DNA from: Octopus bimaculoides
Lineage: Eukaryota
Direction of reading: 5' to 3'
Assembly: GCF_001194135.2 (NCBI RefSeq)
Contig: NC_068994.1
Coordinates: 4,568,993-4,632,992 of the forward strand
DNA length: 64,000 bases
The stretch's first letter is position 1; the number at the start of each line of letters is the position of its first letter. This document shows, in pieces, positions 739 through 56,757 of the stretch. The translations under genes were made by a program, and so were the position numbers. Under the pieces are notes generated by a model that saw only the letters and a list, made by a program, of their open reading frames with translations, had not been told where the DNA came from and searched no databases.

Positions 739-749
739 TATTATTATTA

Positions 750-819
<70 letters not shown>

Positions 820-831
820 CATTATTATTAC

Positions 832-864
<33 letters not shown>

Positions 865-866
865 CA

Positions 867-897
<31 letters not shown>

Positions 898-14254: not shown

Positions 14255-14277
14255 GTTGTTATTATTATTATTTATTA

Positions 14278-14315
<38 letters not shown>

Positions 14316-19238: not shown

Positions 19239-22070
19239 ATGTCTCGAAGCAGCAATTTGAAAAGACGAAAGAAATCTCGGGCCGCAAATGTTGAACGGAA
19301 AAAAAGTGTGGATAATAATAATGGCCCGAATGAAGAAAATGGAGAAGCAGGAGATAACAACATGAAACAAGAAGCTACAGATGAACAACAACAACAACAG
19401 GAGCATCAACAAGAACAACAGATGAAAGAAGAAAATGAGAAATTGGTTGAGCAGATGTCTTCTTCGTGCCAAGAAGAAGCATGTGAAATGAACTCAGATT
19501 TCGTTGGCGATAATAACGAAAAGAAACTCATTAATGATTATGCTGAAAATAGTAGTAATGACGATATTAATAATAATACTAATTATAATAATTTCAATGA
19601 TGATAATAATAATGTTGTTAGCGAAGACAGCGAGGGTATGGAGGTAGGTGACGAAGAAGAAGACGCTGCCCGACTTGAAGAGAAGAGCAAGGAAGAAGAG
19701 GAGCAAAGACTGAAACGGATCAAAGAAGAAGAGGAATACTGCAAGCGACTGGAACAGGAAGGAGAGGAAGGCACGGCTGTCATTCGTGTTCAGACAATGG
19801 AAAATTCTCATCGGTGCCAGATTTGCAACGAGGAATTTGCTGGTTTCCTTGATCTTGAGAAACATAAACTAACCCATCGGCAAATGAAGTCATTCGACTG
19901 CAAAATCTGCAGCAAGACTTTCACTCGCCGCAACCATCTGAAACAACACAAGAGAACACACAAGAGGCCCAATAAACTGCTGAAACCATTGTTCCAGTGT
20001 AACGTTTGTGGGCTGAGATTCTCTCAGAAAATAAACTTGATTGATCACGAAAAGAATCATGAAACTGAGATTTCTCCGCAGGAAGAGTATACTCCGCCGC
20101 CCCCGCCCCAACCACAGCCCCTACAACAGCCCCTACCACAGCCCCTACCACAGCCCCTACCACAGCCCCTGCCACAGCCTCTGGCCCAACCCTTACCTCA
20201 GCCCCAACCAGTGGTCTGTGATTCAGACCGACCTTACAAATGCAATTACTGTGAACGTACTTTCTCTAGGAATGGTGACTTAATGCGACATATGAGGTTC
20301 CATGAAGAGGACACGAGGCAACAACAGCCACAATACTTGAACCCTCATCTACTGTGTCAAGATGAGAAACCATTTAAGTGTAACATCTGTGAACGTGTGT
20401 TTTCAAGGAACGGTGATCTGACGCGCCATTTTCGAGTTCACGAAGAGCCGTCATATCAGCCATCTCAAGTTGCCAACTGCCAGAATGGAGAGGTATTCAA
20501 ATGCAATATCTGCCAGTCTACATTTTCAACCAACGGTAACCTCACCAGACATATGAAGATCCACGAAGAAGTGGTCATCCAGAACAGCCCCAACCATTGC
20601 TATCAAAAAGAAGGCATGTTTTTCTGCAATGTGTGTGGCATTGAATTTACCCGCAATGGGGATCTCACCAGACATTTCAAAACCCATGAGGAACCGTTGC
20701 TCCAAAACTGCAGCCAAATCAATAACAATTGTAATAATAATGACCCCTTTAAATGTAACATCTGCGGACTTGCATTTTCCCAAAACAATGACCTTACTAG
20801 GCATATGAAGAGCCATACTGAATCCTGCATGCCCCACAATGTATACGGCTGTAACGGTGGTTGTACAGAAGAACCCCCTATGGCATTCTCTTGCCGCCTC
20901 TGCCGACGTGTGTTCTCCACGTTTATAGATATGACAGAACATATGAAGATGCATATGGAAGCATCTCACGCTCCACTCACAATGAAGCCGTGTTTTGATA
21001 GTCAAAGCCATGGCAGCCCTAAGGGTTGTATGGATGAACAACATTGCAGTATTCCACGACCTTGTCTCAAAGACGAACCTCAGAATGGCTTGAGATCGTA
21101 TCTCGAAGACCAACCCATCATTTGTCCAATATGCAAACGATTGTTCTCACGACCAGGAGATCTAACAAGACATATGAGGACGCATGGTGAAACCGTTCTG
21201 CAGGAACACGAAAATTTAGCTTTTTATCAAGAGGAGAAACCATTTAAATGCAACATTTGTACACGCACTTTCTCAAGAAACGGTGATTTGACCAGGCATT
21301 TTCGTAGTCATGAAGACACCTATCTTCAAAATGTCGGCAACCCAGTTGTTCCATACGAAACTGAAGAATCCCATCGCTGCAACACTTGTTGTTCAGTTTT
21401 CTCTACAAACGGCAATCTGACGAGACACATGAAAATCCATGAGGAATTTATTAGCCAGCAAAATCTGAACAATTCTCCATTACAAAGAAATAACAATTCA
21501 TTCCGATGTACAATATGTCAGAACTATTTCTCGACAAACGGTAATTTAACTCGGCACATGAAAACACATCGTGAATATTTTAGTCAGAACACTCCACCAA
21601 TGTCTGTGTGTCCAAATGAAGACAGTTCCATGTGTCAGAACATTTGTCCACTGGATGCAGACTTCCAAGACGGAGAAAATTTAAATTTTGATTGTGAAGA
21701 ATGCATGAAGGCTTACAATGAGAAAAACAACCAGAACCATAGCCCCTCTCTGCAGACTTTCACGTGTGTTATTTGCGAGAAAGTGTTTACAAACTGTGAG
21801 ATGTTTGAGAGGCATGTTCGAAGCCATAACCAAGATAAACCTTTCATCTGTGAAATATGTGGAAAAGGGTTTGTACAGAAATACCACCTGACTGTTCATA
21901 AAAGGACTCACACCGGAGAAAGACCCTTTAAATGTAATTTATGCGGGTTCGCTTTCTCTCGCAAGGACCATTTGGTAAGGCACCAAAGGGACAATAAGGT
22001 TGGAATGTACATCTCAGAGGCAGGTGAGACACGATATTCCTGCATCCCAGGTGGTGCTTTACCAAGATAG
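19239..22070 (+). CDS. C2H2 zinc-finger protein ZNF-A, 943 aa, single long coding exon
   Basis: Uninterrupted ORF with ATG in an A-rich context (GCAAAAATGT). It has a basic N-terminal patch (KRRKKSR), an acidic/Asn/Gln-rich region, 15 complete CxxC-x12-HxxxH fingers, one degenerate finger and one finger lacking the last His; a single TGERP linker lies near the C-terminus. No KRAB/BTB/SCAN-like domain was recognised. Confidence 0.93.
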   Translation: MSRSSNLKRRKKSRAANVERKKSVDNNNGPNEENGEAGDNNMKQEATDEQQQQQEHQQEQQMKEENEKLVEQMSSSCQEEACEMNSDFVGDNNEKKLINDYAENSSNDDINNNTNYNNFNDDNNNVVSEDSEGMEVGDEEEDAARLEEKSKEEEEQRLKRIKEEEEYCKRLEQEGEEGTAVIRVQTMENSHRCQICNEEFAGFLDLEKHKLTHRQMKSFDCKICSKTFTRRNHLKQHKRTHKRPNKLLKPLFQCNVCGLRFSQKINLIDHEKNHETEISPQEEYTPPPPPQPQPLQQPLPQPLPQPLPQPLPQPLAQPLPQPQPVVCDSDRPYKCNYCERTFSRNGDLMRHMRFHEEDTRQQQPQYLNPHLLCQDEKPFKCNICERVFSRNGDLTRHFRVHEEPSYQPSQVANCQNGEVFKCNICQSTFSTNGNLTRHMKIHEEVVIQNSPNHCYQKEGMFFCNVCGIEFTRNGDLTRHFKTHEEPLLQNCSQINNNCNNNDPFKCNICGLAFSQNNDLTRHMKSHTESCMPHNVYGCNGGCTEEPPMAFSCRLCRRVFSTFIDMTEHMKMHMEASHAPLTMKPCFDSQSHGSPKGCMDEQHCSIPRPCLKDEPQNGLRSYLEDQPIICPICKRLFSRPGDLTRHMRTHGETVLQEHENLAFYQEEKPFKCNICTRTFSRNGDLTRHFRSHEDTYLQNVGNPVVPYETEESHRCNTCCSVFSTNGNLTRHMKIHEEFISQQNLNNSPLQRNNNSFRCTICQNYFSTNGNLTRHMKTHREYFSQNTPPMSVCPNEDSSMCQNICPLDADFQDGENLNFDCEECMKAYNEKNNQNHSPSLQTFTCVICEKVFTNCEMFERHVRSHNQDKPFICEICGKGFVQKYHLTVHKRTHTGERPFKCNLCGFAFSRKDHLVRHQRDNKVGMYISEAGETRYSCIPGGALPR
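20112..20210 (+). repeat. In-frame 12-bp tandem repeat encoding (PQPL)n
   Basis: CAGCCCCTACCA units, 7-8 copies, inside ZNF-A. Confidence 0.9.
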
Positions 22071-34201: not shown

Positions 34202-34287
34202 ATAATAATAATAATAATAATGATAATAATAATAATGATAATAATAATGATAATAATAATAATAATAATGATAATAATATGATAATA

Positions 34288-34625
34288 ATTCTTTCTATTA
34301 TAGGCACAAAGCCCGAAATTTGTAGGGAGGGGACTAGTTGATTACATTGACCCCAGTGTTTCACTGGTACTTAATTTATTGACCCTGAAATTTATTGACC
34401 TCAGCAGAACAACAACAATAATAATAATAATGGTTTCAAATTTTGGCACAAAGCCAGCAATTTTTTTAGTGGGAAGGAGGGTCAGTTGATTACGTTGACC
34501 CCAGTACCTGACTGGTACTTTATTTTATTGACTCTGAAAGGATGAAAAGTAAAGCTGCCCTCGGCAGGATTTGAACTCAGAAAGTGAAAGAGTCAGAACA
34601 AATACTGCAAAGCAATTTGATGCTG
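34288..34625 (-). mobile_element. Two tandem SINE family A copies separated by (AAT/AAC)n
   Basis: Repeated GGCACAAAGCC...CTGGTACTT...TTGACC motifs. Confidence 0.75.
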
Positions 34626-40748: not shown

Positions 40749-40789
<41 letters not shown>

Positions 40790-40915
40790 CATTATCATCA
40801 TCAACAAGCAACTTCACCACCACCACCACCACCACCCTTTCAATGTTATTGCAACCACAATCATCATCATCATCATCATCATCAATATTATGACTGCCAC
40901 CACCACCACCACAGT
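40571..40915. repeat. Compound (CAT)n/(CAC)n/(TAT)n trinucleotide repeats
   Basis: Direct reading. Confidence 0.9.
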
Positions 40916-42451: not shown

Positions 42452-42606
42452 AAAGGCTTAGCAAAGTCATTCTGAGCTCAAATACCACCGAGGTCAACTT
42501 GGCCTTTCAATCTTTTTGCCATCAACCAATTGAACCAATCAAGTACGACTATCTTCTTCCCTCTAAAATGTTGCTGGCCTTGTGCCAAAATTAGAAAGAA
42601 TTATCA

Positions 42607-42652
<46 letters not shown>

Positions 42653-42855: not shown

Positions 42856-42889
<34 letters not shown>

Positions 42890-43225: not shown

Positions 43226-43258
<33 letters not shown>

Positions 43259-43424: not shown

Positions 43425-43731
43425 TTTGACCTTTAAATGATAAAAAGCAAAGTTGACCCCCCAAACAAATTTGAATTCAGAATGTAAACAGCCAGACAAT
43501 AACAATAATTATTATTTCTATTCTAGGCACAAGGCCTTGGAAATTTGGGGGGAGAAGAGAGCTAGTTGATTACATTGACCCCAGTGCATAACTGGTACTT
43601 ATTTCATTAACCCCGAAAGGGTGAAAAACAAAGTCAACTTTGGTGGAATTTGAACTCAGAATGTAGTGGCAGACAAAATACCACTAAGCATTTCGCCCGG
43701 CCTGCAAACGAGTCGGCCAGCTTGCAGCCTT
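43425..43731 (-). mobile_element. Two SINE family A copies on the - strand
   Basis: A partial copy at 43425-43490 and a near-full copy at 43516-43731. Confidence 0.8.
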
Positions 43732-43743
43732 AATAATAATAAT

Positions 43744-43780
<37 letters not shown>

Positions 43781-43873
43781 TTAGAAGCAACCAATTGAAA
43801 ACATGTTTGTGTGTTTGAGATGTTGTTGTTTGTATAAAACAGATGTTGTAGGGTCCGGGTCCTTATGTTTCTG

Positions 43874-46385
43874 TCATTTTGATGTGCTGGGGTGGCTGGT
43901 CTGGCCCTTTGTTGGGGCGGTTCCTCTTGGATACTCAATCCTACTGCATGGGAAAACACTGGGCATGTTTGCCCAGGTGGTAGGGGGCATCGAGGTCATA
44001 GAAAAGCCGCGGGGCCAGAGGTAGTTACCCTCCCAGCGCTGGGACATCTCGTGGAGGTTCATGGAGGTCATCCACGAGGAAGAGGTGTGAGGGGATGCTG
44101 ATGATGACGGAACAGACGAGGGAGATGACGCGGGCATTAACGACTGTCCTGACCGTCCACCGACTGATGGGGAGGGGATCAACAACGAGGTGTTGGACTG
44201 CTGCTGCTGTTGTTGTTGTTGTTGTGGCTGTTGTTGTTGTTGTTGTTGTGTCATGTGAGCATTCGTCTGGCGGTTGTTCTGGTTCTGGTTATGCGCCATA
44301 CTCTGAGTGTAGTCAGTAGCAGACTTCAGATTAGAACTCTCGCTCTTCACATTACCTGCATTGACTGCAGAGTTGTTTGTTGTGCTAACTGCAGTCGGAA
44401 CCCTAGGGTTATTGGCTCCACTCGGGGCTGTCTTCACACCGGTGCTGCCACCTGCGACACTGCTTCCGTTGTCCTGCAACAACATGGCGTCCCTCTCGGC
44501 AGACTGCTTAGCTGCGAGCATGAGGCTTGCGTTGTGTGCCTTAGCAGCATGCGAGCGCTTGTGGTTGATCAACGTGGTCCGTTGTGCGAAGGATTTCGAA
44601 CACAAGTCACAGGTGAATGGCTTGATGCCAGTGTGAACACGTTCGTGCGCATGCAAGTTACTAAGCTGACTGAACATTTTATTGCAGGTGTTGCATCGAT
44701 ATGGCTTCTCACCCGAGTGGACACGCTCGTGTGTCCGTAAATTAACCAGCTGAGTAAATGCCTTTGAACACATTGAACACTTAAAAAGGTCTCCTGAATG
44801 CAAGCGACGGTGGTTTTCAAGATTCGCACGCTGGCTAAAGGTCTTTGAACACTGTTCGCAGCTGTATGGTTTTTCCCCGGTGTGAATACGTTCGTGCATT
44901 TTTTGGTTGCTCTGCTGACTAAAGGCTTTCGGACAATAACTACATTTGAAAGGTTTCTCACCTGTGTGAGTCCTTATGTGAGATTTTTGCTCGGTTTGCT
45001 GACAAAATGCTTTAGGGCAATACGTGCATTTGTAAGGCTTGATCCCTGTGTGAATACGTTCGTGGTTCTGCAAGTTGATTTCCAACGTAAAGGCTTTTCC
45101 ACAAACTAAGCACTTGAACAAGTCCCCCGTGTGTATCCGCTTGTGACTGTCAAGGTTAGTTTTTTGAGAAAACGACCGATCACACTGATCGCAGTGGAAC
45201 CGTTTTTCACCAGTATGAGAACACAAGTGGGCCTTTAACGTACCCTGTTGACTAAATGATTTGGAGCAGTAGGTGCAGTGGTAGGGCTTCACCCCCGTGT
45301 GCAATCGCTCGTGGTTGTTTAGTGCACTTTGTTGCGAAAATCTCGAGCTGCAAAACGTGCAGGCAAAGGGCCGCTCCCCCGTGTGCACTCGTTCATGATT
45401 GCGTAAGTTTATCTCGAGGGTAAATGCTTTGGGGCAGGTCGAACACTTGAAGAGGTCGCCGGTGTGAATGCGTTTATGACTGTCGAGGTTTGTCTTTTGA
45501 GAGAAGGAACGGTCACAGAGGTCGCAATGGAAGCGTTTCTCACCCGTGTGCGAACAAAGGTGAGCTTTGAGAGTCCCCTGTTGGCTGAAGGATTTTGAGC
45601 AGAACGTACACTGGTATGGCTTCACTCCTGTGTGGAGGCGTTCATGATTGCGAAGTGCGCTCTGCTGAGAGAAGCGACGGTTGCAATAGGTGCAAACAAA
45701 TGGCCTCTCTCCAGTATGGATCCTCTGGTGGTTATGAAGATTTATCTCCAGAGTGAAAGCTTTGGAACAGATCTGACAAGTAAACAAGTCTCCTGTATGC
45801 ACCCTCTTGTGACTGTCCAGGTTAGTCTTCTGGCTGAAACATTTCTCACACTTGTCGCATTTGTACGGTTTCTCTCCTGAATGTGTACGAAGGTGGATCT
45901 TTAAGTTTCCCTGTTGGCTGAATGACTTTGAACAAATGGCACAGTGAAAGGGCTTCTCACCCGAATGCACACGCTGGTGGCTTTTCAGGTTTACCAATAG
46001 ACTGAAAGCCTTACCGCATGTGTTACAGGTGAAAGGTTTCACACCTGTGTGTGTTCTTTCGTGGTTGCGGAGAAAAATTTGCTGAGAGAAAGCTTTGTTA
46101 CAAAACGAACAAAAGAACGTTTTCTCTTTGGCTAGACTTTTCTGTAGTGCTGGATCGGTGACGCTTTGGAGGTTCGGCTGCCCCACCATCGGCACGGTGA
46201 GCATCGCCTGAGGGGGTGGGATTGCAGGAACTGTTAGGGGCAGGGACAGTAGACCCGAGCCACTCATTGAACACTCGTGGTTCATCATGTCCATCTTTTG
46301 GCTGAAGGTCTTCTTGCAGGCTTCACATTTGAACTGCTTTCTTTCAGAAGCATCGTTCGAGTCACACTGCGAGTCATGAGTCTTT
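43874..46385 (-). CDS. C2H2 zinc-finger protein ZNF-B (5' end hidden in the gap 46386-47333)
   Basis: Open frame from the gap edge to TGA at 43874. It contains one atypical finger (CxxC..HECS), 19 tandem C2H2 fingers at 46117-44549 with TGEKP-type or (T/S)GDL linkers, and a Gln/Ser/Asn-rich C-terminal tail. Confidence 0.92.
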
Positions 46386-47333
46386 NNNNNNNNNNNNNNN
46401 NNNNNNNNNNNNNNNNNNNNNNNNNNNNNNNNNNNNNNNNNNNNNNNNNNNNNNNNNNNNNNNNNNNNNNNNNNNNNNNNNNNNNNNNNNNNNNNNNNNN
46501 NNNNNNNNNNNNNNNNNNNNNNNNNNNNNNNNNNNNNNNNNNNNNNNNNNNNNNNNNNNNNNNNNNNNNNNNNNNNNNNNNNNNNNNNNNNNNNNNNNNN
46601 NNNNNNNNNNNNNNNNNNNNNNNNNNNNNNNNNNNNNNNNNNNNNNNNNNNNNNNNNNNNNNNNNNNNNNNNNNNNNNNNNNNNNNNNNNNNNNNNNNNN
46701 NNNNNNNNNNNNNNNNNNNNNNNNNNNNNNNNNNNNNNNNNNNNNNNNNNNNNNNNNNNNNNNNNNNNNNNNNNNNNNNNNNNNNNNNNNNNNNNNNNNN
46801 NNNNNNNNNNNNNNNNNNNNNNNNNNNNNNNNNNNNNNNNNNNNNNNNNNNNNNNNNNNNNNNNNNNNNNNNNNNNNNNNNNNNNNNNNNNNNNNNNNNN
46901 NNNNNNNNNNNNNNNNNNNNNNNNNNNNNNNNNNNNNNNNNNNNNNNNNNNNNNNNNNNNNNNNNNNNNNNNNNNNNNNNNNNNNNNNNNNNNNNNNNNN
47001 NNNNNNNNNNNNNNNNNNNNNNNNNNNNNNNNNNNNNNNNNNNNNNNNNNNNNNNNNNNNNNNNNNNNNNNNNNNNNNNNNNNNNNNNNNNNNNNNNNNN
47101 NNNNNNNNNNNNNNNNNNNNNNNNNNNNNNNNNNNNNNNNNNNNNNNNNNNNNNNNNNNNNNNNNNNNNNNNNNNNNNNNNNNNNNNNNNNNNNNNNNNN
47201 NNNNNNNNNNNNNNNNNNNNNNNNNNNNNNNNNNNNNNNNNNNNNNNNNNNNNNNNNNNNNNNNNNNNNNNNNNNNNNNNNNNNNNNNNNNNNNNNNNNN
47301 NNNNNNNNNNNNNNNNNNNNNNNNNNNNNNNNN

Positions 47334-55680: not shown

Positions 55681-55711
<31 letters not shown>

Positions 55712-56489: not shown

Positions 56490-56757
56490 TCTGCTTATAT
56501 GTCTGTACACACCTTTGAATGCAGTGTATGCCAGAAGATTTGCAAATCCAACAGAGGCCTCAAAAGACATTTTAAGATCCACAAAGAGCAGAACTTATCT
56601 GCAGCTTTTGGTGGTCCAAATCAAATATGCAGTCTATGTGGGTGTCTTTCCAGAACATTGTCTGGTTTAAAAAGCCACATCAGACGCCATGAAAGGGCTA
56701 AGGTGTGGGTACAGGAGATGGTCAAACTCTGTATAAGGAGTAGACGACCACCATACA
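56490..56757 (+). mobile_element. Two C2H2-like fingers, probably the C-terminal end of an RTE-clade LINE ORF2
   Basis: FECSVCQKICKSNRGLKRHFKIH and CSLCGCLSRTLSGLKSHIRRH; the GLxSHxRxH pattern resembles RTE ORF2 C-termini; no real upstream start. Confidence 0.5.

What the first reader, a model, noticed from the sequence alone, without database searches (positions are those of the whole stretch)
44549..46117. ZNF-B: 333-bp four-finger cassette with a 4-residue (T/S)GDL linker after every fourth finger
Seen: 19 fingers; linkers after fingers 4, 8, 12 and 16 are TGDL, TGDL, TGDL and SGDL (one residue shorter, no basic residue or Pro), and the others are TGEKP-like. Helices cycle QQG(N/T)LK, QKTNLDS, LEINLxN, QQSALxN with a period of 111 aa (starts 45949, 45616, 45283, 44950). 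Amino-acid-identical stretches differ at many third codon positions (45421-45540 versus 45088-45207), so the repeat is old and constrained rather than a fresh duplication. Known: linker length sets finger register on DNA, and Q(-1), N/A(+3) favour A/T bases. Inference: a ruler-like protein built for a periodic AT-rich site of about 12 bp per cassette, or for hinged four-finger units; I do not recognise this architecture from characterised proteins.
Basis: partly seen in the sequence, partly recalled or inferred. Interest (0 to 1): 0.75.

Follow-up and report, generated by a model that had tools for sequence, protein, structure and literature searches.

The report
Conserved octopus zinc-finger gene, periodic short linkers
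This is an unannotated Octopus bimaculoides gene for a 19-zinc-finger protein in which every fourth linker between fingers is one residue short, a layout kept unchanged in cuttlefish, so it is under selection, but its target and the role of the short linker are untested.

Summary
The minus-strand ORF 46384..43874 encodes 19 C2H2 fingers (46117..44549). The linkers after fingers 4, 8, 12 and 16 are TGDL, TGDL, TGDL and SGDL, with an exact 111-aa period.

The window is Octopus bimaculoides chromosome CM046614.1. The gene has no protein entry because its N-terminus lies in an assembly gap.

The cuttlefish (Sepia pharaonis) orthologue is one 867-aa ORF with the same 19 fingers and the same four short linkers. 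There is no indel across the 524-aa array. Amino-acid identity is 89.5%, synonymous sites are saturated, and dN is 0.07. 75 of 76 base-contacting residues are identical.

The gene belongs to a small cephalopod-only family with its own N- and C-terminal motifs. Three paralogue groups carry [TS]G[DE]L linkers. All 11 are conserved between Octopus and Sepia, but their spacing differs between paralogues, so "every fourth finger" applies only to this gene.

AlphaFold models fit DNA-bound finger arrays less well when TGDL is central than in an all-canonical control.

Most likely this is an ancient DNA-binding factor for A/T-rich DNA, built by cassette duplication, with the short linker as a selected joint between finger blocks. 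The "ruler" mechanism remains untested. I rate it a new variant of a known kind, of moderate interest.

The parts
43874..46384 (-). Open reading frame of ZNF-B from the edge of the assembly gap to the TGA stop (836 aa plus stop). The 5' end of the gene is missing.
   Evidence: Pfam zf-C2H2 and zf-H2C2_2 well above cut-off
46386..47333 (.). Run of 948 N (assembly gap). It hides the roughly 50 N-terminal residues that carry the family's MYPxQ... motif.
   Evidence: no N-terminal match anywhere in the window; alignment to the Sepia ORF
46271..46333 (-). Lone N-terminal finger with C-x2-C-x12-H-x-C spacing. The same spacing is seen in Sepia; the finger is a regular C2H2 in paralogue P0082.
44549..46117 (-). 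Array of 19 C2H2 fingers (524 aa), made of four full 111-aa units and one three-finger unit.
45785..46117 (-). Unit 1 (fingers 1-4), 57-62% identical to the other units.
45452..45784 (-). Unit 2 (fingers 5-8; helices LEINLHN, QQSALRN, QQGTLKA, QKTNLDS).
45119..45451 (-). Unit 3 (fingers 9-12). It is 86% aa and 71% nt identical to unit 2, with third-position identity of 35%.
44786..45118 (-). Unit 4 (fingers 13-16), diverged. Fingers 14 and 15 have Gln at helix +4.
44549..44785 (-). Unit 5 (fingers 17-19), partial.
45785..45796 (-). Short linker 1, TGDL, after finger 4.
45452..45463 (-). Short linker 2, TGDL, after finger 8.
45119..45130 (-). Short linker 3, TGDL, after finger 12.
44786..44797 (-). 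Short linker 4, SGDL, after finger 16.
44198..44248 (-). Poly-Gln tract in the low-complexity C-terminal region.
43946..44080 (-). C-terminal family motif SSWMTS..LHEMSQRWEGNYLWPRGF..W.NMPSVFPC.

Best explanation
ZNF-B is an intact but unannotated gene of Octopus bimaculoides. Its relatives are single-exon genes. It belongs to a small family found only in cephalopods, defined by an N-terminal MYPxQPxY motif and a C-terminal SWENNYLWxRGF motif.

The 19-finger array was built before the octopus-cuttlefish split by duplicating a multi-finger cassette. One linker in that cassette had lost a residue (TGEKP-type became [TS]G[DE]L). Since then, purifying selection has frozen every finger, every base-contacting residue and every linker.

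Most likely (inferred, not shown) it is a sequence-specific DNA-binding factor for a long A-rich, A/T-only target. Three near-identical four-finger blocks would read three similar sub-sites of about 11-12 bp.

The short, non-basic, proline-free linker would then act as a selected joint. It pulls the QKTNLDS-type finger and the LEINLxN-type finger closer than the canonical geometry allows, so the array works as blocks of three or four fingers rather than as one continuous wrap.
For: Shown:
- Architecture and exact period.
- The window is O. bimaculoides CM046614.1.
- The Sepia pharaonis orthologue is a single 867-aa ORF with the same 19 fingers, and TGDL/TGDL/TGDL/SGDL at the same places.
- Across the array: 89.5% aa identity, third-position identity 41% (saturated), dN 0.069, no indel over 524 aa. 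Each unit is closest to its orthologous unit. Gly and Leu codons in the short linkers differ between copies.
- 75 of 76 specificity residues (-1, 2, 3, 6) are identical, against 73% at the remaining positions that are neither zinc ligands, core residues nor on the helix.
- All 11 short linkers in three paralogue groups are conserved between Octopus and Sepia or a Sepia-type sequence.
- A profile of the C-terminal tail finds only 10 protein clusters among 1.84 billion, and all the named ones are cephalopod.
- No KRAB or other Pfam domain is present.

Suggestive:
- Both AlphaFold models are confident (pLDDT about 90).
- The control with all-canonical linkers fits DNA-bound arrays at TM 0.80-0.86 and rmsd 2.0-2.5 A.
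- The model with TGDL in the centre fits the same targets at TM 0.63-0.72 and rmsd 3.5-4.9 A.
- The best structural match is Aart, designed for ANN triplets. Finger 16 (QRANLEN) resembles the published AAA-binding helix QRANLRA (my own knowledge).
Against: - There is no binding, expression or structural data.
- No protein or transcript-derived sequence for this gene exists in the 15-billion-protein collection.
- The structural contrast rests on one model each, and I could not inspect the coordinates.
- Spacing of the short linkers differs between paralogues, so no particular block length is required.
- Linker length is rarely free to change in any conserved finger array, so conservation alone does not prove a special role.
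- The recognition code is unreliable for Leu at -1 and for positions 6 = S/A/I.
- A guessed 12-mer was not clearly enriched in the window (5 matches against 1.5 expected; 3 of 100 shuffles reached 5).
Confidence: 0.55

Rival explanations
1. Frozen accident. A one-residue deletion in one linker was tolerated and then copied along with its cassette. The periodicity is only a footprint of duplication, and the short linker has no role beyond not breaking the protein.
For: - The spacing is 4-4-4-4 here, but 3-3-4 in P0082 and 1+3 in P0011.
- The same pattern (TGEM/TGEF/TGEL once per duplicated cassette) is seen in two other ZNFs, beetle P0050 and the unnamed ENA entry P0030.
- Family members with similar QRTNL-type fingers use ordinary 5-residue linkers.
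Against: - All 11 short linkers are kept in two lineages whose synonymous sites are saturated, with only D/E and T/S exchanges.
- The other unusual linkers (TGVKP, TGEKR, TGERP) are also kept position by position. This argues that each linker is individually tuned.
- The predicted geometry differs from the control.
Confidence: 0.27
2. The array, or part of it, binds RNA or proteins rather than double-stranded DNA. The short linker would then mark a packed finger pair used as an interaction module.
For: - Long finger arrays often use only some fingers for DNA (PMC10287918).
- Classical fingers can bind RNA (PMC5100589).
- There are weak Pfam hits to zf-C2H2_jaz.
Against: - 14 of 18 linkers are the TGEKP type, the hallmark of canonical DNA docking (PMC3668361).
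- Both models adopt DNA-wrapping shapes.
- Conservation is strongest at the DNA-contacting positions.
- The jaz hits are generic and occur in any C2H2 array.
Confidence: 0.1
3. It is one of the fast-evolving, lineage-specific cephalopod C2H2 genes, comparable to KRAB-ZFPs that chase transposons.
For: - Coleoid genomes carry 1,800-2,800 C2H2 genes (PMC9068888).
- Sepia relatives are labelled 'KRAB' in the database.
Against: - There is a one-to-one orthologue in cuttlefish with 75 of 76 specificity residues identical.
- No KRAB domain is present.
- The family is small, with 10 clusters.
Confidence: 0.03
4. It is an assembly artefact or a collapsed or misjoined repeat.
For: The window has many N gaps, one of them inside the gene.
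Against: - An independent assembly of another species gives the same 19-finger layout.
- The units differ at most synonymous sites, so they cannot be misassembled copies.
Confidence: 0.01

Closest known systems
Paralogues in the same cephalopod family: O. bimaculoides 'ZFP2' (P0082), O. vulgaris 'zinc finger protein 2 homolog' (P0011), and their Sepia or Sepia-type counterparts
   Same: - Same N- and C-terminal motifs, and single-exon genes.
- Same finger types.
- [TS]G[DE]L linker after the QK[TI]NLDxH-type finger.
- P0082 lies on the same chromosome, about 1.2 Mb away.
   Different: - 13 fingers in the array rather than 19.
- Short linkers spaced 3-3-4, or two per four fingers.
- 40-55% identity to ZNF-B.
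- None of them is characterised.
ZFY / ZFX / ZNF711 even-odd two-finger repeat ('jumping-linker' proposal; PMC11030341 and the references it cites)
   Same: A long C2H2 array with a higher-order repeat in which finger type and linker alternate, conserved over long evolutionary times.
   Different: - Period 2, not 4 (here lag-2 similarity is 0.26 and lag-4 is 0.49).
- Not homologous beyond the finger fold.
- Different linkers.
Engineered poly-finger proteins built from 2- or 3-finger blocks joined by altered linkers (Kim and Pabo 1998; Moore, Klug and Choo 2001; my own knowledge)
   Same: The idea that a long array works better as blocks separated by a non-canonical linker at regular intervals.
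   Different: The engineered linkers are longer and more flexible. Here the linker is one residue shorter, which should tighten the junction rather than relax it.
Aart, a designed six-finger protein for ANN triplets (PDB 2i13)
   Same: - Best structural match for both models.
- About 50% identity.
- Q/N-rich helices of the type used for A-rich triplets.
   Different: All of its linkers are canonical, it is an artificial protein, and it has no cassette structure.
Natural arrays split by non-canonical linkers (TFIIIA, CTCF, WT1 +KTS; my own knowledge; CTCF review PMC8084297)
   Same: Linker variation divides an array into functional sub-arrays.
   Different: Those linkers are longer or irregular, and they are not periodic.
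Other ZNFs with TGE[MLF] 4-residue linkers: P0050 (beetle Gonioctena quinquepunctata) and P0030 (ENA entry without a name, taxon unknown)
   Same: A four-residue TGEx linker recurs once per duplicated 5-6 finger cassette.
   Different: Different finger types and long inter-cassette spacers, and apparently of independent origin.

Membership tests
Classical (Krueppel-type) C2H2 poly-zinc-finger proteins | Repeated C-x2-C-x12-H-x3-H fingers recognised by Pfam zf-C2H2 / zf-H2C2_2 | tested here: met
   19 fingers. PF00096 scores 294 bits and PF13465 scores 419 bits, far above their cut-offs.
Classical (Krueppel-type) C2H2 poly-zinc-finger proteins | Five-residue TGE(K/R)P-type linkers between fingers | tested here: inconclusive
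   14 of 18 linkers are this type. Four are 4-residue [TS]GDL.
KRAB zinc-finger proteins (the database label on the Sepia relatives) | N-terminal KRAB domain (PF01352) | tested here: not met
   No KRAB hit in the window ORF, in P0082, or in the N-terminus of the full Sepia orthologue.
Cephalopod 'MYP... / ...WENNYLWxRGF' zinc-finger family (working name, defined here) | C-terminal motif W.(T/S)S..L..M.Q.WE.NYLW.RGF...W.N.P...C | tested here: met
   Alignment A1. The profile search returns only family members.
Cephalopod 'MYP... / ...WENNYLWxRGF' zinc-finger family (working name, defined here) | N-terminal MYPxQPxY...N.(F/Y)N motif | not testable with these tools
   In the window it lies in the N gap 46386-47333. 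It is present in the Sepia orthologue.
Cephalopod 'MYP... / ...WENNYLWxRGF' zinc-finger family (working name, defined here) | Whole protein encoded in one exon | tested here: inconclusive
   True for P0082, for the Sepia orthologue and for other members. In the window the ORF is uninterrupted from the gap to the stop codon.
Fast-evolving lineage-specific cephalopod C2H2 expansion | Turnover of base-contacting residues and lack of one-to-one orthologues between octopods and decapods | tested here: not met
   One-to-one Sepia orthologue with 75 of 76 specificity residues identical.
ZFY/ZFX-type alternating arrays | Two-finger (even/odd) periodicity | tested here: not met
   Lag-2 similarity is 0.26, against 0.49 at lag 4.

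The most novel reading that the evidence does not exclude
The one-residue deletion is a register device. By pulling the following finger about one base-pair rise closer, it would make each four-finger cassette span about 11 bp, one turn of B-DNA, instead of 12. Repeated cassettes would then read a phased A/T-rich repeat or impose a regular kink. This would be a natural counterpart to engineered block-linked finger arrays. The family's private N- and C-terminal motifs would be a cephalopod-specific effector pair, analogous to KRAB in tetrapods or ZAD in insects.
Probability: 0.12. Interest if true: 0.75.

Novelty: new variant of a known kind. Interest (0 to 1): 0.5.

Why it matters
Rules for how long zinc-finger arrays read DNA are still poor, and linker geometry is one of the least understood variables.

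This gene offers a natural experiment. The same four fingers are repeated three times with identical base-contacting residues. They are separated by a linker that is shorter than any seen in the solved DNA complexes matched here. The whole layout has been held fixed since octopus and cuttlefish diverged, about 270 million years ago by published estimates (my own knowledge).

Paralogues with different spacings of the same linker provide built-in controls. If the short linker shifts register or splits the array into blocks, that would inform motif prediction for long arrays and the design of artificial finger proteins.

The gene also marks a small, conserved, cephalopod-only transcription-factor family. 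That family is distinct from the huge fast-evolving C2H2 expansions of these genomes and is largely mis-annotated or missing in public gene sets.

Tried and rejected
- **Tandem Repeats Finder** on 43500-46400 saw no 333-bp period, because the DNA is too diverged.
- **First protein search** was swamped by generic vertebrate ZNFs. Only three family members were usable.
- **Word-indexed search with the C-terminal tails** found nothing. The exhaustive profile search was needed instead.
- **Search of the window for the family's N-terminus** found nothing, so it lies in the gap.
- **PDB sequence search** for a solved pair of fingers with a 4-residue linker. All the aligned chains shown need a one-residue insertion. 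Only a ZFAT NMR entry has equal matched length, and I did not examine it.
- **Literature searches** for short or four-residue finger linkers and for cephalopod finger linkers found nothing relevant.
- **A 12-mer guessed from the recognition code** (TAAATAATAAAT, one mismatch) gave 5 matches against 1.5 expected, none tandem. This is not informative.
- **tblastx of the Sepia flanks against the window** showed no conserved neighbours within 10 kb.
- **Repeat sharing with other loci** did not identify the species. An exact look-up of the neighbouring gene did.
- **Third protein search not used.** Any finger-containing query would again be outranked by long generic arrays. As a result, the frequency of TGDL-type linkers across all cephalopod ZNFs was not measured. 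In the small sample at hand (46 linkers in 5 other cephalopod arrays) there were none. About 2,100 linkers in 120 mostly vertebrate ZNFs showed this type only in the family itself and in two other proteins, P0030 and P0050.
- **Rejected readings:** KRAB-ZFP, fast-evolving expansion member, assembly artefact.

Full report
**What is there**

The minus strand of the window carries one long ORF. It runs from the edge of a 948-base N gap (46386-47333) to a TGA stop at 43874-43876 and encodes 836 residues. In order, it encodes:
- a lone degenerate finger (46271-46333);
- a Pro-rich spacer;
- 19 classical C2H2 fingers (46117..44549);
- a Ser/Asn/Gln-rich tail with a poly-Gln tract (44198-44248);
- a Trp-rich C-terminal motif (43946-44080).

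The four linkers after fingers 4, 8, 12 and 16 are TGDL, TGDL, TGDL and SGDL. The other 14 are five-residue TGEKP-like linkers. The period is exactly 111 residues with no indel. Finger similarity at variable positions peaks at lags 4, 8 and 12 (0.49, 0.42, 0.38, against 0.25-0.34 at the other lags up to 11). In a permutation test, 0 of 20,000 shuffles reached the observed lag-4 value.

The clean cycle QQG(N/T)LK / QKTNLDS / LEINLxN / QQSALxN covers fingers 3-13. Fingers 14-19 are much more diverged.

**Age and constraint**
- Units 2 and 3 are 86% identical in protein but only 71% in DNA.
- Third codon positions are 35% identical, which is at the level of unrelated units. 65 of the 96 identical residues use different codons. 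dN is 0.10.
- The window is Octopus bimaculoides chromosome CM046614.1. The neighbouring gene ZNF-A matches a called gene there exactly.
- A profile of the C-terminal tail was run against 1.84 billion representative proteins. It returned ten clusters, and the named ones are all cephalopod.
- One of these, a 249-residue Sepia (Acanthosepion) pharaonis fragment labelled 'KRAB', is the orthologue. Its genomic locus holds a single 867-residue ORF (L002 8147-10750) with the full N-terminus, the lone finger, 19 fingers, and TGDL/TGDL/TGDL/SGDL at the same four places.
- Over the 524-residue array there is no indel. Identity is 89.5%, third-position identity is 41% (saturated) and dN is 0.069.
- Each octopus unit is closest to its cuttlefish counterpart, so the cassette duplications predate the split. 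The Gly and Leu codons of the short linkers differ between copies.
- 75 of 76 base-contacting residues (-1, 2, 3, 6) are identical. The remaining finger positions, which are neither zinc ligands, core residues nor on the helix, are 73% identical. The odd linkers TGVKP, TGEKR and TGERP are kept position by position.
- dN/dS is therefore far below 1.

**The family**

Three proteins from the first search share the window protein's C-terminal motif and, going by the Sepia orthologue, its N-terminal motif MYPxQPxY. They are P0082 (O. bimaculoides), P0108 (a Sepia-type sequence) and P0011 (O. vulgaris). They also carry [TS]G[DE]L linkers, always after a QK[TI]NL[DN]xH-type finger.

The spacing differs between paralogues:
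- after array fingers 3, 6 and 10 in P0082 and P0108;
- two short linkers per four fingers in P0011 and in its Sepia orthologue (L006 4615-6759).

All 11 short linkers in the three groups are conserved between the octopus and cuttlefish lineages. Other members have only ordinary linkers: Argonauta P0128, and two tandem genes in Sepia at L003 10001-12112 and 40768-42804.

No Pfam domain other than zinc fingers is found, and there is no KRAB domain. P0082 is single-exon and lies about 1.2 Mb from ZNF-B on the same chromosome.

ZNF-B itself has no protein in the collections searched. It is unannotated, probably because of the gap.

**How unusual the linker is**
- Among about 2,100 linkers in the 120 best generic ZNF hits, 96% have the canonical length.
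- TG[DE]x-type four-residue linkers occur only in the three family members and in two other proteins, the beetle protein P0050 and an unnamed ENA entry (P0030). In both, the short linker also recurs once per duplicated cassette.
- Five other cephalopod arrays at hand (46 linkers) have none.
- Every solved multi-finger chain shown residue by residue needs a one-residue insertion to align across the junction.
- A genome-wide count in cephalopods could not be made with these tools.

**Structure test**

I ran two AlphaFold2 models of four fingers each.
- One has TGDL in the centre (fingers 7-10): pLDDT 90.7.
- The control has only canonical internal linkers (fingers 9-12): pLDDT 89.5.

Fit to DNA-bound arrays in the PDB (TM-score / rmsd in Å):

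| PDB target | Control | TGDL-centred model |
|---|---|---|
| 2i13 | 0.80 / 2.5 | 0.72 / 3.5 |
| 6ml3 | 0.86 / 2.0 | 0.63 / 4.9 |
| 5v3g | 0.82 / 2.2 | 0.71 / 3.6 |
| 5kkq | 0.80 / 2.0 | 0.68 / 3.9 |

This is weak evidence, with one model each and no coordinates to inspect. It does suggest that the short linker moves the two halves away from the canonical wrap without disordering them.

**Interpretation**

Shown:
- This is a functional, strongly constrained, ancient gene.
- The array was built by cassette duplication.
- The short linkers are under selection for length.

Inferred from the established recognition code and the TGEKP hallmark (PMC3668361):
- The protein binds DNA.
- The target is A-rich and A/T-only. 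Gln at -1 and Asn at +3 and +6 read adenine, and Ala or Thr at +3 favours thymine.
- Three similar sub-sites would be read by units 1-3.

Speculative:
- Removing one residue, and with it the Lys and Pro, shortens the span by roughly one base-pair rise. That could shift the register or make a fixed joint.

The different spacings in the paralogues argue against a strict four-finger ruler. They favour a 'block joint' that travelled with whichever cassette was duplicated.

The main rival is that the short linker is a tolerated accident frozen along with everything else. Long arrays with higher-order repeats are already known (ZFY/ZFX/ZNF711; PMC11030341). The coleoid C2H2 expansions (PMC9068888) are a different, fast-evolving population.

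**Verdict**

This is a real, conserved and unusual variant of a very well-known protein kind, with no characterised relative. I rate its interest as moderate: it makes a clean natural test case for linker geometry in long finger arrays. Nothing yet shows a new mechanism.

Noticed in passing
window 43874-46384 and 46386-47333; L002 8147-10750: ZNF-B has no entry in the protein collections searched, because its 5' end is lost in an assembly gap. The Sepia orthologue is annotated only as a 249-aa fragment named 'KRAB', although the ORF is 867 aa and has no KRAB domain.
   Followed up: yes
window 44987-44989 and 44903-44905: Fingers 14 and 15 of the octopus protein have Gln (CAA) at helix position +4. 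Sepia has the usual core Leu (CTG, TTA) there, and paralogue P0082 has Trp in the equivalent QQTE finger. Two adjacent fingers may be destabilised or used differently.
   Followed up: partly
window 46271-46333: The lone N-terminal finger has the spacing C-x2-C-x12-H-x-C in both Octopus and Sepia, an unusual last-ligand position. The paralogue has a regular C2H2 finger there.
   Followed up: partly
window 19239-22067 (+): ZNF-A is an annotated 943-aa gene with 15 fingers separated by long 20-65 residue acidic linkers. It has near-identical helices (SRNGDLTRH / STNGNLTRH) and a PQPL repeat at 20105-20210. This is a different kind of non-canonical finger array.
   Followed up: no
L003 10001-12112 and 40768-42804: Two further members of the same family lie in tandem about 30 kb apart in Sepia pharaonis. 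The database gene model P0126 spans from the start of the first ORF to L003 37994 and includes that ORF's N-terminal and C-terminal segments but not its finger array.
   Followed up: partly
window 739-897, 1177-1430, 14259-14315, 34202-34289, 40751-40795, 42600-42652, 42857-42889, 43226-43257, 43731-43778, 55681-55710: (AAT)n-type trinucleotide microsatellites are very frequent, with ten arrays in 64 kb and several just downstream of ZNF-B. They are the kind of A/T-only sequence the finger helices would be expected to read. I found no link between them and the protein.
   Followed up: no
window 56520-56690 (+): Two isolated C2H2-like fingers sit in a short ORF next to microsatellites. This may be a remnant of a transposon or a gene fragment.
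   Followed up: no
P0030 and P0050 (proteins): Two ZNFs, an unnamed ENA entry (P0030) and the beetle Gonioctena protein (P0050), show duplicated 5-6 finger cassettes. Each cassette has one four-residue TGEM/TGEF/TGEL linker. This looks like an independent case of periodic short linkers.
   Followed up: partly
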